Positions 17,082 to 28,440 of a DNA stretch of 64,000 bases are shown here, one piece after another. The position numbers and the translations under genes are program-made. Source of the stretch: Octopus sinensis (Eukaryota). The stretch lies in NCBI RefSeq assembly GCF_006345805.1, contig NC_043023.1:19034001-19098000 (forward strand), given 5' to 3'. A model generated the notes under the pieces. That model saw nothing but the letters and a program-made list of their open reading frames with translations, was not told where the DNA came from and did not search any database. Numbering within the stretch: the first letter of the stretch is position 1; the number at the start of each line of letters is the position of its first letter.

Positions 17082-20000
17082 ATAAATGGGCAAGCTATTG
17101 CAATTCTCACCTACTCAGTCACATCCATTCTAAGGGCTGAGGGGCTCTTCTAAGGAGGGTAGATGAGCCAGGACTAGTGAGACTTTTACACTGTACAAGG
17201 AGATAACTACATTAAACATTTTAATAAATGGGCAAGCTATTGCAATTCTCATCAACTCGGTCACATCCATTCTAAGGGCTTAGGGGCTCTTCTAAGGAGG
17301 GTAGATGAGCCAGCAAATTTGGGTAAGAAAAGTTTCCTTCAGCTCATATCTGAAAGGATTAGTGAGATTTTGACACTGTACAAGGTGATATCTACGTCAA
17401 ACATTTAAATAAATGGGCAAGCTATTGCAATTCTCACCAACTCTGTTACATCCATTCTAAGGGCTGGGGGGCTCTTCTAAGGAGGGTAGATGAATCAGGA
17501 CTAGTGAGACTTTGACACTGTACAAGGAGATAACTACATTAAACATTTTAATAAATGGGCAAGCTATTGCAATTCTCACCAACTCAGTCACATCCATTCT
17601 AAGGGCTTAGGGGCCCTTCTAAGGAGGGTAGATGAGCCAGGACTAGTGAGACATTTACACTGTACAAGGAGATATCTACATCCAGTATTTTGATAAATGG
17701 GCAAGCTATTGCAATTCTCACCTACTCGGTCACATCCATTCAAAGGGCTTAGGGGCCCTTCAAAGGAGGGTAGATGAGCCAGGACTAGTGAGACTTTGAC
17801 ACTGTACAAGGAGATAACTACATTAAACATTTTAATAAATGGGCAAGCTATTGCAATTCTCATCAACTCAGTCACATCCATTCTAAGGGCTTAGGGGCCC
17901 TTCTAAGGAGGGTAGATGAATCAGGACTAGTGAGACTTTGACACTGTACAAGGAGATAACTACATTAAACATTTTAATAAATGGGCAAGCTATTGCAATT
18001 CTCACCAACTCAGTCACATCCATTCTAAGGGCTGAGGGGCCCTTCTAAGGAGGGTAGATGAGCCAGGACTAGTGAGACATTTACACTGTACAAGGAGATA
18101 TCTACATCCAGTATTTTGATAAATGGGCAAGCTATTGCAATTCTCACCTACTCGGTCACATCCATTCTAAGGGCTTAGGGGCCCTTCAAAGGAGGGTAGA
18201 TGAGCCAGGACTAGTGAGACTTTGACACTGTACAAGGAGATAACTACATTAAACATTTTAATAAATGGGCAAGCTATTGCAATTCTCACCTACTCAGTCA
18301 CATCCATTCTAAGGGCTTCAGGGCTCTTCTAAGGAGAGTAGATGAGCCAGGACTAGTGAGCCTTTAGACACAATAATAAGAATTTGGTACCATTCAAGTT
18401 AATAAATGGGCAAGCTACCATAATCCCCATCATCTTGGCTACATCGACCAAACATTGAATCATGTCAGTTGCTGGTTCTGGAATTGGCAACTAGTTTCCT
18501 GCTTTTCATTTTAGAATCTTTGTTACGTTTTAGAATCATTTTAGAATCTTTGTTACGTATTTTAGTTAATTTTTGTTCATTAAAATGGAATTTCAAGTTA
18601 AGGAAAAGAAGCATTTTCGACACCTTTTTGCTCTTAACCAAGGGTCTAGGGGCTGCAAAAGCTGCTCACGACGTTTGCACTCAACAGAGCTATTCAAGGG
18701 AAAAGACCTAATCAGCAGCCTGGTTTTCTCCTGTACAATGCCTGCCCTCATATCGCCAATACGACCAAGGAAGCCATTCAAACGCATGGCTGGGAAGTGC
18801 AGCCACATCCGAAGTACTCTCCTTATTTGGCAACAACAGATTTGAGAGTGTTATAACAGTGAATATTCCATCAAATAATGTTTGATAAAAGGCAAGCTAT
18901 TGCAATTCTCACCAACTCAGTTACATCCATTCTAAGGGCTGAGGAGCTCTTCTAAAGAGGGTAGATGAGCCAGGACTAGTGAGACTTTGACACTGTACGA
19001 GGAGATAACTACATTAAACATTTTAATAAATGGGCAAGCTATTGCAATTCTCACCAACTCAGACACATCCATTCTAAGGGCTTAGGGGCCCTTCTAAGGA
19101 GGGTAGATGAGCCAGGACTAGTGAGACTTTTACACTGTACAAGGAGATAACTACATTAAACATTTTAATAAATGGGCAAGCTATTGCAATTCTCACCAAC
19201 TCATTTACATCCATTCTAAGGGCTTAGGGGCTCTTCTAAGGAGGGTAGATGAGCCAGGACTAGTGAGACATTTACACTGTACAAGGAGATATCTACATCC
19301 AGTATTTTGATAAATGGGCAAGCTATTGCAATTCTCAGAATACTAAGTATTTGGTACCATTCAAGTTAATAAATGGGCAAGCTACCATAATCCCCATCAT
19401 CTTGGCTACATCGACCAAACATTGAATCATGTCAGTTGCTGGTTCTGGAATTGGCAACTAGTTTCCTGCTTTTCAATTTAGAATCTTTGTTACGTTTTAG
19501 AATCATTTTAGAATCTTTGTTACGTATTTTAGTTAATTTTTGCTTATTTATAGTTCATCAAAATGGAATTTCAAGTTAAGGAAAAGAAGCATTTTTGACA
19601 CCTTTTTGCTTTTAATCAACGGTCTAGCGGCTGCAAAAGCGGCTCACGACATTTGCACTCAACAGAGCTATTCAAGAGAAGAGACCTAATCAGCAGCCTG
19701 GAGTTCTCCTGTACGACAATGCCTGCCCTCATATCGCCAATACGACCAAGGAAGCCATTCAAACGCATGGCTGGGAAGTGCAGCCACATCCAAAGTACTC
19801 TCCTTATTTGGCAACAACAGATTTGAGAGTGTTATAACAGTGAATGTTCCATCAAATAATGTTTGATAAAAGGGCAAGCTATTGCAATTCTCACCAACTC
19901 AGTTACATCCATTCTAAGGGCTGAGGGGCTCTTCTAAGGAGGGTAGATGAGCCAGGACTAGTGAGACTTTGACACTGTACAAGGAGATATCTACATCCAG

Positions 20001-26000: not shown

Positions 26001-28440
26001 TAAATGGGCAAGCTACCATAATCCCCATCATCTTGGCTACATCGACCAAACATTGAATCATGTCAGTTGCTGGTTCTGGAATTGGCAACTAGTTTCCTGC
26101 TTTTCATTTTAGAATCTTTGTTACATTTTAGAATCATTTTAGAATCTTTGTTACGTATTTTAGTTAATTTTTGCTTATTTATAGTTCATCAAAATGGAAT
26201 TTCAAGTTAAGAAAAAGAAGCATTTTCGACACCGTTTTACTTATAATCAAGGGTCTAGGGGCTGCAAAAGCAGCTCACGACATTTGCACTCAACAGAGCT
26301 ATTCAAGAGAAAAGACCTAATAGCAGCCTGGAGTTCTCCTGTACGACAATGCCTGCCCTCATATCGCCAATACGACCAAGGAAGCCATTCAAACGCATGG
26401 CTGGGAAGTGCAGCCACATCTGAAGTACTCTCCTTATTTGGCAACAACAGATTTGAGAGTGTTATAACAGTGAATATTCCATCAAATAATGTTTGATAAA
26501 AGGGCAAGCTATTGCAATTCTCACCAACTCAGTTACATCCATTCTAAGGGCTGAGGGGCTCTTCTAAGGAGGGTAGATGAGCCAGGACTAGTGAGACTTT
26601 GACACTGTACAAGGAGATAACTACATTAAACATTTTAATAAATGGGCAAGCTATTGCAATTCTCACCAACTCAGTCACATCCATTCTAAGTGCTGAGGGG
26701 CTCTTCTAAGGAGGGTAGATGAGCCAGGACTAGTGAGACTTTGACACTGTACAAGGAGATAACTACATTAAACATTTTAATAAATGGGCAAGCTATTGCA
26801 ATTCTCACCAACTCAGTCACATCCATTCTTAGGGCTTCAGGGCTCTTCTAAGGAGGGTAGATGAGCCAGGACTAGTGAGCCTTTAGACACAATAATAAGA
26901 ATTTGGAACCATTCAAATTAATAAATGGGCAAGCTACCATAATCCCCATCATCTTGGCTACATCGACCAAACATTGAATCATGTCAGTTGCTGGTTCTGG
27001 AATTGGCAACTAGTTTCCTGCTTTTCATTTTAGAATCTTTGTTACGTTTTAGAATCATTTTAGAATCTTTGTTACGTATTTTAGTTAATTTTTGCTTATT
27101 TATAGTTCATCAAAATGGAATTTCAAGTTAAGAAAAAGAAGCATTTTCGACACCTTTTTGCTTTTAATCAAGGGTCTAGGGGCTGCAAAAGCGGCTCACG
27201 ACATTTGCACTCAACAGAGCTATTCAAGAGAAAAGACCTAATCAGCAGCCTGGAGTTCTCCTGTACGACAATGCCTGCCCTCATATCGCCAATACGACCA
27301 AGGAAGCCATTCAAACGCATGGCTGGGAAGTGCAGCCATATCTGAAGTACTCTCCTTATTTGGCAACAACAGATTTGAGAGTGTTATAACAGTGAATATT
27401 CCATCAAATAATGTTTGATAAAAGGGCAAGCTATTGCAATTCTCACCAACTCAGTTACATCCATTCTAAGGGCTGAGGGGCTCTTCTAAGGAGGGTCGAT
27501 GAGCCAGGACTAGTGAGACTTTGACACTGTACAAGGAGATAACTACATTAAACATTTTGATAAAAGGGCAAGCTATTGCAATTCTCACCAACTCAGTTAC
27601 ATCCATTCTAAGGGCTGAGGGGCTCTTCTAAGGAGGGTAGATGAGCCAGGACTAGTGAGACTTTGACACTGTACAAGGAGATAACTACATTAAACATTTT
27701 AATAAATGGGCAAGCTATTGCAATTCTCACCAACTCAGTCACATCCATTCTAAGGGCTTAGGGGCCTTTCTAAGGAGGGTAGATGAGCCAGGACTAGTGA
27801 GCCTTTAGACACAATAATAAGAATTTGGTACCATTCAAATTAATAAATGGGCAAGCTACCATAATCCCCATCATCTTGGCTACATCGACCAAACATTGAA
27901 TCATGTCAGTTGCCGGTTCTGGAATTGGCAACTAGTTTCCTGCTTTTCATTTTAGAATCTTTGTTACGTTTTAGAATCATTTTAGAATCTTTGTTACGTA
28001 TTTTAGTTAACTTTTGCTTATTTGTAGTTCATCAAAATGGAATTTCAAGTTAAGAAAAAGAAGCATTTTCGACACCGTTTTGCTTGTAATCAAGGGTCTA
28101 GGGGCTGCAAAAGCTGCTCACGACATTTGCACTAAACACAGCTATTCAAGGGAAAAGACCTAATCAGCAGCCTGGTTTTCTCCTGTACAATGCCTGCCCT
28201 CATATCGCCAATACGACCAAGGAAGCCATTCAAATGCATGGCTGGGAAGTGCAGCCACATCCGCAGTACTCCCCTTATTTGGCAACAACAGATTTCCACT
28301 GCTTTCGATTTCTTTCAAATGATATACGCGGAGTTTCAGTCAATATCGATGCAGAATTGAGATCTTGGTTGCATCAATTTCCAAGTCAAAATTGGGGTGA
28401 TTTCTACCAACGAGGTATTGAAAATCTTGAACAAGGGTGA
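17082..28440 (+). repeat. Higher-order tandem array: runs of 142-bp monomers plus 11 copies of a ~0.5-kb linker/mariner module
   Basis: Monomer ATAAATGGGCAAGC at 142-bp spacing (17409, 17551, 17693, 17835); mariner ATGs at 18585, 19563, 20484, 21548, 22469, 23249, 24028, 24949, 26194, 27115, 28037. Confidence 0.95.
28037..28440 (+). pseudogene. Internally deleted mariner transposase relic (terminal, longest copy)
   Basis: N-terminal MEFQVKKKKHFRH..F..NQG...KAAHDIC fused to AIQ-KRPN...HIANTTKEAIQ-HGWEVQPHPQYSPYLATTDFHCFRFLSN (decayed HPPYSPDLAPxDF motif). Confidence 0.85.

What the first reader, a model, noticed from the sequence alone, without database searches (positions are those of the whole stretch)
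17082..28440. Higher-order satellite that has amplified a deleted mariner transposase 11 times between variable runs of a 142-bp monomer
Seen: spacings between mariner ATGs are 978, 921, 1064, 921, 780, 779, 921, 1245, 921 and 922 bp, i.e. ~496 bp + n x 142 (n = 2-4, plus one 185-bp variant monomer and one partial). Each module joins a mariner N-terminus (MEFQVKKKKHFRH...KAAHDIC) directly to a C-terminal piece (NRAIQEKRPN...HGWEV.PHP.YSP.LATTDF) and is cut right after that motif. Only the last copy (28037-28440) continues toward the transposase C-terminus. No TIR pair is visible. Known: mariner transposases carry HDNARPH and YSPDLAP motifs around the DD34D triad. Inference: a TIR-less relic plus its flank was co-amplified into an alpha-satellite-like two-level array. 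It could be a young satellite caught mid-formation, or a tandem source of anti-mariner small RNAs (a piRNA-cluster-like locus).
Basis: partly seen in the sequence, partly recalled or inferred. Interest (0 to 1): 0.8.

Follow-up and report, generated by a model that had tools for sequence, protein, structure and literature searches.

The report
Tandemly amplified satellite-plus-mariner-fragment composite repeat
A dead, internally deleted mariner transposon that landed beside a small 142-bp satellite was copied together with that satellite into 11 head-to-tail units of about 0.8-1.8 kb, a tidy but ordinary example of how animal genomes build composite tandem repeats from transposon debris.

Summary

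Two corrections:
- The feature runs from 17050 to 28867, not 17082 to 28440.
- A TIR pair does exist. Every unit carries the 5' TIR. The last copy runs on to a 3' TIR at 28840-28867, with a nested 328-bp repeat in its 3' UTR.

The repeated unit is one genomic segment. It runs from the left edge of a pre-existing 142-bp satellite (X) to a point just after the third catalytic Asp codon of the mariner ORF (Y). All ten Y|X junctions are identical, including an 11-bp filler absent from the native left flank. That points to one founding non-homologous tandem duplication. Unequal exchange then expanded it to 11 units and varied the monomer count.

Units differ by 0.4-4.6% overall. The interior units are the most alike and the two edge units the most divergent. 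No unit can encode a protein.

This is a local composite (TE plus satellite) tandem array, a new member of a known kind and most likely neutral. The small-RNA idea could not be tested. CpG depletion is only a weak hint of past methylation. Interest is low to moderate.

The parts
17050..28295 (+). Composite tandem array: 11 units (U01-U11), each a run of 142-bp satellite, a degenerate edge monomer and the 5' part of a deleted mariner. Unit lengths are 1794, 981, 921, 1063, 922, 780, 778, 922, 1244, 922 and 919 bp.
   Evidence: Unit table, self-BLAST, monomer map. Whole units differ by 0.4-4.6%.
17050..18357 (+). Satellite part of U01. It holds the native left edge (degenerate first monomer, GAGAGTGAATGTTCC...), about 9 monomers of subtypes A, B and C, a 42-bp insertion at 17314-17355, and an internal 426-bp (3-monomer) periodicity.
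   Evidence: TRF period 142 (7.2 copies, 91%) and period 426 (2.4 copies, 95%). Subtypes. The left flank 16560-17049 resembles neither the monomer nor mariner.
18358..18478 (+). Degenerate last monomer and spacer between the satellite and the mariner 5' TIR. The same segment is repeated in every unit, starting at about ATG-227.
   Evidence: A 19-bp exact in-register match to monomer positions 43-61, score 38 against a shuffle maximum of 23. Present in all units.
18479..18843 (+). Mariner fragment c01: 5' TIR 18479-18506, 5' UTR, ATG 18585, internal-deletion joint at about ATG+92 to +104, cut at Y = 18843. Equivalent fragments c02-c10 run from these TIR starts to these Y ends: 19446-19824, 20368-20745, 21431-21808, 22352-22730, 23132-23510, 23911-24288, 24832-25210, 26077-26454, 26998-27376.
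18839..18861 (+). First of ten identical Y|X junctions: ...CAGATTT | GAGAGTG + 11-bp filler TTATAACAGTG + AATGTTCC. The others start at 19820, 20741, 21804, 22726, 23506, 24284, 25206, 26450 and 27372.
   Evidence: The filler is absent from the native left edge at 17050-17064 and contains the palindrome TGTTATAACA.
27920..28867 (+). Last copy (c11), the only one with both ends: 5' TIR 27920-27947, ATG 28037, about 610-bp internal deletion relative to L001, C-terminal coding remnant to about 28450, 3' UTR, 3' TIR 28840-28867 followed by TA.
   Evidence: Inverted repeat I3, DNA match to the L001 mariner in two blocks plus the TIR, TIR alignment A1, Mos1 match.
28487..28814 (+). Nested 328-bp dispersed repeat inserted in the 3' UTR of the last mariner copy.
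   Evidence: 96% identical second copy at 32543-32870 in an unrelated context.

Best explanation
This is a locus-specific composite tandem array made by segmental duplication. It is not a working gene or a mobile unit.

Proposed history:
1. A short 142-bp satellite, already differentiated into monomer subtypes, existed at this site.
2. A DD34D mariner inserted about 120 bp beyond the array's last full monomer, within and just past a degenerate terminal monomer.
3. The mariner lost about 610 bp of its ORF, either before or after insertion.
4. One non-homologous (microhomology plus filler) event joined a point in the mariner ORF just after the third catalytic Asp codon (Y) to the left edge of the satellite (X). 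This made a tandem duplication of the whole X..Y segment.
5. Unequal sister-chromatid or homologue exchange and gene conversion between these kb-sized repeats expanded the array to 11 units and homogenised its interior.
6. Out-of-register exchange among 142-bp monomers changed the monomer number per unit.

The array most likely has no sequence-specific function and evolves neutrally, probably in methylated or silent chromatin.

Shown: the anatomy, the single junction type, the TIRs, the loss of coding capacity and the divergence pattern. Inferred: the order of events, the recombination mechanism and neutrality.
For: - All ten junctions share the same breakpoint and the same 11-bp filler. The first unit starts in native non-repeated flank and the last runs on into the rest of the mariner. 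This is the signature of a tandem duplication of one segment.
- The left flank is neither mariner-like nor monomer-like, and the 3' flank is not monomer-like.
- All copies share the same internal deletion and the same 5' TIR and UTR, so they have a single origin.
- Monomer subtypes that score about 91% against the monomer consensus (most monomers score 97-99%) recur in different units. U09 repeats the left part of U01, including the 42-bp insertion. So the satellite predates the amplification, and the shorter units are deletion derivatives.
- Interior units are nearly identical: U05/U06 0.4% and U06/U07 0.5% over whole units (0.2% and 1.0% in the mariner-bearing core). Edge units are the most divergent, up to 4.6% (5.1% in the core). 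This is the pattern expected under unequal exchange.
- U02 is closest to U04 (2.4%), and U03 to U05 and U06 (0.9% each). This suggests at least one two-unit exchange.
- Every copy has stops or frameshifts and lacks the first catalytic Asp region.
- TE-plus-satellite composite arrays and tandemisation of TE parts are documented phenomena (PMC12628747, PMC9659126, 10.1101/2021.07.12.451456).
Against: - X coincides with the very edge of the satellite. Under random breakpoints that is a coincidence.
- The two edge copies share three derived changes, including loss of the GAC codon, that all nine inner copies lack. Plain unequal exchange from a two-copy founder does not predict this. It needs an extra conversion event.
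- Whether the filler was inserted at the junction or deleted from the native edge cannot be decided.
- No reads, no second haplotype and no related genome were available, so the copy number and even the existence of the array rest on one assembly, which has an N gap at 59707-59806.
Confidence: 0.78

Rival explanations
1. Rolling-circle or eccDNA route. The X..Y segment was excised as a circle, which created the Y|X joint. It was copied into a concatemer by rolling-circle replication and put back into its parent locus by homologous recombination. This has been proposed for the Bari1 (Tc1-mariner) heterochromatic cluster of Drosophila melanogaster.
For: A single junction type in all units is equally expected from a circle. 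The pattern of many 5' ends and one 3' end resembles the truncated Helitron arrays ascribed to aberrant rolling-circle copying (PMC12628747). The Bari1 cluster is explained this way (PMC9659126).
Against: - Mariner moves by cut-and-paste and has no rolling-circle step.
- The unit contains over 400 bp of non-element DNA.
- The array sits exactly in its native context, so an extra re-integration step is needed.
- Units differ in monomer content and by up to 4.6%, so later unequal exchange is needed anyway.
Confidence: 0.1
2. Functional small-RNA source. The array is a uni-strand piRNA-cluster-like locus, kept because its transcripts yield small RNAs against this mariner family.
For: There are eleven same-strand copies of about 380 bp of mariner sequence. 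The region is TE-rich. CpG o/e is 0.28 in the array against 0.5-0.64 in the flanks. CpG positions vary 2.5 times more than others, and all such changes are C>T or G>A. Both are compatible with germline methylation or silencing.
Against: - No expression or small-RNA data exist for this locus.
- The CpG signal is borderline (Fisher p = 0.05), and the copies are not independent: a CpG-poor founder was amplified.
- More than half of each unit is satellite, which is irrelevant to mariner targeting.
- There is no sign of selection. Copies decay freely, and the family itself looks dead here.
- Only one relative was found in the public protein database, at 74% identity over the N-terminal 23% of the query (about 32 aa). 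That database may hold little animal sequence.
Confidence: 0.07
3. Assembly artefact. The repeat count or arrangement was produced by mis-assembly, either over-expansion or collapse of a shorter or longer real array.
For: The scaffold contains an N gap (59707-59806) and is extremely repeat-rich. Tandem repeats with kb-scale units are error-prone in assembly.
Against: No two units are identical. They differ by substitutions shared among subsets of units and by distinct monomer compositions. This is not what duplicated reads or random read errors produce. The first and last units merge cleanly into unique flanks.
Confidence: 0.05

Closest known systems
Composite elements of the complete human genome (T2T-CHM13; for example TELO-composite with its variable 49-bp 'ajax' array), Hoyt et al., 10.1101/2021.07.12.451456
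   Same: The repeating unit is built from TE pieces plus satellite or other repeats. Units are arranged in tandem, evolve as one unit (a 'super-repeat'), and carry a variable-length internal short-period array.
   Different: The organism is different and unidentified, probably an invertebrate. The unit here holds only two repeat kinds (142-bp satellite and a mariner fragment) plus a short spacer. Only one 11-unit locus is known. The human definition asks for three or more repeated sequences.
Mariner-like element Mboumar inside the satellite DNA of Messor ants (Palomeque et al. 2006, cited in PMC12628747 and PMC9659126)
   Same: A mariner is embedded in or next to satellite DNA, and was discussed as a player in satellite evolution.
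   Different: According to the table in PMC9659126, the Messor mariner is simply found inside the satDNA. I did not read the primary paper. Here a truncated 5' part has itself become part of the repeated unit.
Bari1 (Tc1-mariner superfamily) heterochromatic cluster of about 80 tandem copies in Drosophila melanogaster (PMC9659126)
   Same: A Tc1/mariner-superfamily element is present as a head-to-tail tandem array at one locus.
   Different: By my recollection, not checked here, Bari1 units are whole elements joined end to end. Here the units are a truncated element plus over 400 bp of neighbouring satellite, joined at an internal ORF position.
Tandem arrays of truncated Helitrons with multiple 5' ends and a single 3' end (Xiong et al., as summarised in PMC12628747)
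   Same: The topology is the same: many 5' ends and one 3' end at the last unit.
   Different: The Helitron arrays are attributed to the element's own rolling-circle replication. Mariner has no such step, and the unit here includes non-element DNA.
Tandem-repeat-containing MITEs (Xenopus miDNA4 of Tc1/mariner type; clam DTC84), PMC12628747, PMC3879986
   Same: They show the same association of a non-autonomous Tc1/mariner-type element with a variable-copy satellite-like repeat.
   Different: In those elements the repeats lie between the TIRs and move with the element. Here the 142-bp monomers lie outside the TIR pair: the last copy has both TIRs and no monomer between them.

Membership tests
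mariner (Tc1/mariner superfamily, DD34D) | Transposase homologous to Mos1/Hsmar1 | tested here: met
   The conceptual peptide matches the Mos1 transposase catalytic domain at E = 1.6e-18 and SETMAR at 5.7e-17. The N-terminus is 74% identical to an HTH_48 protein. DNA is 77-78% identical to the mariner in L001, whose gene products carry HTH_48 and Transposase_1. Pfam hits on the fragment itself are below the curated cut-offs.
mariner (Tc1/mariner superfamily, DD34D) | Second and third catalytic Asp separated by 34 residues | tested here: met
   In inner copies, D in LLYDNACPH and D in ATTDF have 34 residues between them. This was counted on the translation and aligns with Mos1 HDNA...PSDY. The edge copies c01 and c11 have lost the first of these two codons.
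mariner (Tc1/mariner superfamily, DD34D) | Terminal inverted repeats of about 28-30 bp at both ends | tested here: met
   This holds for the last copy only. TIRs at 27920-27947 and 28840-28867 are 21/28 identical by my count, and the core is shared with both L001 ends. The other ten copies have the 5' TIR only.
mariner (Tc1/mariner superfamily, DD34D) | TA target-site duplication | tested here: inconclusive
   TA follows the 3' TIR (28868-28869), but TC precedes the 5' TIR (27918-27919), as read.
mariner (Tc1/mariner superfamily, DD34D) | Intact transposase ORF (autonomous element) | tested here: not met
   There is an internal deletion of about 610 bp that removes the first catalytic Asp region, and every copy has frameshifts and stops.
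Satellite DNA with higher-order repeat (alpha-satellite-like) | Head-to-tail monomers of constant length | tested here: met
   41 full or partial 142-bp monomers, 89-99% identical to the consensus.
Satellite DNA with higher-order repeat (alpha-satellite-like) | Higher-order units made only of diverged monomers, with units more alike than the monomers within them | tested here: not met
   Units are more alike (95.4-99.6%) than the divergent monomer subtypes are to the monomer consensus (about 91%). However, about 490 bp of each unit is mariner and spacer, and the monomer number varies. A true 3-monomer (426-bp) periodicity exists only inside U01.
Satellite DNA with higher-order repeat (alpha-satellite-like) | High genomic abundance or long arrays | not testable with these tools
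   Only 11.8 kb is seen here. No other copy lies in the 64-kb window apart from a 35-bp fragment at 15162-15196. Public metagenome scans gave 0 hits.
Composite tandem repeat (sensu T2T-CHM13 'composite elements') | Repeating unit combining TE sequence with satellites or other repeats, arrayed in tandem | tested here: met
   Unit structure. The stricter wording 'three or more repeated sequences' is only borderline met: there are two repeat kinds plus a spacer.
Tandem-repeat-containing MITE | Tandem repeats located between the element's TIRs | tested here: not met
   The only copy with both TIRs (27920-28867) contains no 142-bp monomer. The monomers lie upstream of each 5' TIR.
piRNA cluster | Production of 24-31 nt small RNAs; heterochromatin marks | not testable with these tools
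   No expression or epigenetic data are available. There is only CpG depletion.

The most novel reading that the evidence does not exclude
The array is a young uni-strand small-RNA (piRNA-like) locus. Tandem amplification of a captured mariner fragment would boost the dose of anti-mariner small RNAs. The embedded satellite would supply the recombination substrate that lets copy number track transposon pressure.
Probability: 0.07. Interest if true: 0.55.

Novelty: new member of a known kind. Interest (0 to 1): 0.27.

Why it matters
It is a clean worked example of how a composite repeat is born. A single illegitimate junction is still recognisable in all ten copies. Both native ends are preserved, and the later layers (unequal exchange, interior homogenisation, monomer gain and loss) can all be read from one sequence.

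Such loci are useful for teaching and for calibrating models of satellite birth from 'TE graveyards'. They do not change what is known. If the same unit turned out to be abundant genome-wide, or to be a small-RNA source, it would gain interest.

Tried and rejected
- Left flank as an older, decayed mariner unit: rejected. Local alignment score was 22 against a shuffle mean of 20.5.
- Mariner inserted inside a monomer that continues beyond the 3' TIR: rejected. The 3' flank scored 14 against a shuffle mean of 17.
- Larger duplication joining both flanks: only a 64-bp shared fragment was found.
- 148-bp satellite at 39-45.5 kb related to the 142-bp monomer: no.
- Template for the 11-bp filler elsewhere in the window: none found.
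- Identifying the organism: two window ORFs are not on record. A LINE-type ORF hits many marine invertebrates (Penaeus, Clytia, Holothuria) at 56-69% identity, which is not diagnostic.
- Searching public collections: 0 hits in metagenomes for the junction and for the monomer. No relative of the L001 mariner protein (P0001), the query used, in bacterial or archaeal genomes, as expected.
- Protein database: only one relative, P0001 on locus L001. It served as the outgroup and as the TIR reference.
- tRNA scan of the window: nothing.
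Full report
**What is there.** The window is eukaryotic and very repeat-rich, with long microsatellites, several satellites, LINE and SINE debris and one N gap. 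On the + strand between 17050 and 28867 lies a two-level tandem structure. Translating the window finds eleven MEFQVK... starts at 18585, 19563, 20484, 21548, 22469, 23249, 24028, 24949, 26194, 27115 and 28037. TRF and a consensus BLAST place 41 full or partial 142-bp monomers between them.

**The mariner part.** The conceptual peptide has an N-terminal 32 residues fused to LNRAIQEKRPN...YDNACPH...YSPYLATTDF. It matches the Mos1 transposase catalytic domain at E = 1.6e-18 and human SETMAR at 5.7e-17. The two Asp residues retained are 34 residues apart, the mariner DD34D spacing.

The only relative in the large protein database, P0001, lies on a 406-kb ENA contig. That contig carries a nearly full-length mariner of the same lineage (locus L001). 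Against it, the window element aligns in two blocks at 77-78% DNA identity that skip about 610 bp. The skipped stretch covers most of the DNA-binding domain and the first catalytic Asp region.

L001 also shows what the TIRs of this lineage look like (TTAAGTTGGCAACTAAGTTCTTGCCG...). With that guide:
- The 5' TIR is present 117 bp upstream of the ATG in units U02-U11, and 106 bp upstream in U01, which has an 11-bp deletion there.
- A matching 3' TIR lies at 28840-28867, followed by TA.
- The last copy is thus a two-ended, internally deleted mariner at 27920-28867.
- Its 3' UTR carries a nested 328-bp dispersed repeat at 28487-28814. A 96% identical second copy lies at 32543-32870.

No copy has an open frame.

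**The repeated unit and its junction.** Each mariner fragment is cut at the same base, after ...ACAACAGATTT, which is just after the third catalytic Asp codon. It is followed by GAGAGTG-TTATAACAGTG-AATGTTCCATCAAATAATG... and then monomers. The same GAGAGTG...AATGTTCC sequence, without the 11-bp TTATAACAGTG, forms the native left edge of the first monomer block at 17050. Upstream of it the DNA resembles neither the monomer nor mariner.

The repeat unit is therefore one genomic segment, X..Y. X is the left edge of the satellite and Y is a point inside the mariner ORF. It is present 11 times, as U01-U11, with lengths 1794, 981, 921, 1063, 922, 780, 778, 922, 1244, 922 and 919 bp. The first unit begins in native flank, and the last continues past Y into the rest of the element.

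All ten Y|X joints are the same, filler included, apart from one substitution in the filler of the third joint. The filler contains the palindrome TGTTATAACA and has no template elsewhere in the window. This is the footprint of one founding, non-homologous tandem duplication. I infer that all later copies were made by homologous processes.

**The satellite predates the amplification.** Monomers fall into subtypes: A, B, C (which follows a 42-bp insertion) and a terminal type. The B and C subtypes score about 91% against the monomer consensus, where most monomers score 97-99%. The same subtypes recur in different units. U09 repeats the left part of U01 (P'-A-insertion-C-A-B), and most other units look like shortened versions. 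U01 has an internal 426-bp, three-monomer periodicity.

Between the last full monomer and the 5' TIR lies a degenerate monomer with a 19-bp exact in-register match. The mariner therefore landed just outside the right edge of a small differentiated satellite. The sequence beyond the 3' TIR is not monomer-like.

**Divergence pattern.**
- Over the 490-bp non-monomer core, copies differ by 0.2-5.1%. Whole units differ by 0.4-4.6%.
- The most similar units are interior neighbours: U05/U06 at 0.4% and U06/U07 at 0.5%. Some non-adjacent units are also very close, such as U03/U05 at 0.9% and U06/U10 at 0.8%.
- U02's nearest relative is U04, at 2.4%. Together with U03/U05 this suggests at least one two-unit exchange.
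- The two edge units are the most divergent. This is the classical picture of concerted evolution by unequal exchange, with poor homogenisation at array ends.
- The array is not brand new, but turnover continued until recently.

**One unexplained detail.** The edge copies c01 and c11 share three changes within a 60-90 bp tract: E>G, V>F and loss of the GAC codon for the second catalytic Asp. All nine inner copies keep the state seen in the L001 outgroup. Plain unequal exchange from a two-copy founder does not predict this. An ectopic conversion of one inner unit from another mariner copy, followed by spread through the interior, would explain it. That is inference only.

**Methylation hint.** CpG observed/expected is 0.28 in the array against 0.5-0.64 in the flanks. 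The monomer consensus has no CpG where about 6 are expected. In the core, CpG positions are 2.5 times more variable than others, and all five changes are C>T or G>A (Fisher p = 0.05). This is compatible with germline methylation but weak, because amplified copies are not independent observations.

[quoted passage not shown] They list a Messor ant mariner found inside satellite DNA, the Xenopus Tc1/mariner MITE miDNA4 with internal satellite repeats, and the 80-copy Bari1 (Tc1-mariner) cluster of Drosophila (PMC9659126).

The complete human genome paper defines 'composite elements': tandemly arrayed units combining TEs, satellites and other repeats. Some of these have variable internal short-period arrays and evolve as 'super-repeats' (10.1101/2021.07.12.451456). 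The present locus works like these.

It fails the tests for three other categories:
- It is not a pure monomer-based HOR, because about 490 bp of non-satellite DNA sits in each unit.
- It is not a repeat-containing MITE, because the monomers lie outside the TIR pair.
- It is not a Bari1-type whole-element array.

The 'many 5' ends, one 3' end' topology recalls truncated Helitron arrays. There it is ascribed to the element's own rolling-circle replication, which mariner lacks.

**Verdict.** This is a real, well-resolved composite tandem array formed by one illegitimate tandem duplication of [satellite + 5' part of a dead mariner], followed by unequal exchange. It is most likely neutral.
- Rivals are rolling-circle or eccDNA amplification (0.10), a small-RNA source (0.07) and an assembly artefact (0.05).
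- It is a new member of a known kind, and interest is about 0.27.
- The organism could not be identified. The TE relatives point loosely to a marine invertebrate.
- Public metagenome scans for the junction and for the monomer found nothing.

Noticed in passing
window 39014-45511: A much larger satellite: 148-bp unit, 44 copies, 95% matches. It is unrelated in sequence to the 142-bp monomer and almost devoid of CpG (o/e 0.02).
   Followed up: partly
window 1619-2068, 46386-46854, 10325-10424: A dispersed element with internal 62/63-bp tandem repeats (4.4-4.5 copies) and near-identical 149-150-aa ORFs at two sites 45 kb apart. A third, shorter related repeat lies at 10.3 kb.
   Followed up: no
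window 28487-28814 and 32543-32870: A 328-bp dispersed repeat with 96% identity between the two copies. One copy is nested in the 3' UTR of the last mariner copy. Its type (MITE or SINE) was not determined.
   Followed up: partly
window 18585-18843 and 28037-28295 versus the nine copies between: The first and last mariner copies share three derived changes, including loss of the codon for the second catalytic Asp, within a 60-90 bp tract that all inner copies lack. This suggests a conversion tract, and its source is unknown.
   Followed up: partly
window 15162-15196: An isolated 35-bp fragment about 89% identical to the core of the 142-bp monomer (score 46 against a shuffle maximum of 32). The monomer, or part of it, may exist as a dispersed sequence.
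   Followed up: partly
window 3659-4199, 52151-53016, 53485-54005, 54246-56346: Exceptionally long microsatellites: (CAT)180, (TATG)218, (AGAG)131 and (GTAT)531. They produce a strong local GC skew (0.69-0.84).
   Followed up: no
window 38420-38787 and 59055-59528: Tandem pairs of a roughly 190-bp tRNA-like SINE-type repeat. ARAGORN calls no tRNA.
   Followed up: no
window 59707-59806: A 100-base N run (assembly gap) inside a LINE reverse-transcriptase ORF. The sequence is a gapped scaffold, which matters for trusting tandem copy numbers.
   Followed up: no
window 14261-14683 and 50457-51143: Two short arrays with 84-bp (5 copies) and 85-bp (8 copies) units, 97% matches. Whether they are related to each other was not tested.
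   Followed up: no
L001 4873-6160 (ENA ERZ22157276, contig ctg12871l): A nearly full-length mariner of the same lineage with both TIRs, HTH_48 and Transposase_1 parts but several frameshifts. It lies in a 406-kb contig filed under a metagenome assembly, presumably host (animal) DNA.
   Followed up: partly
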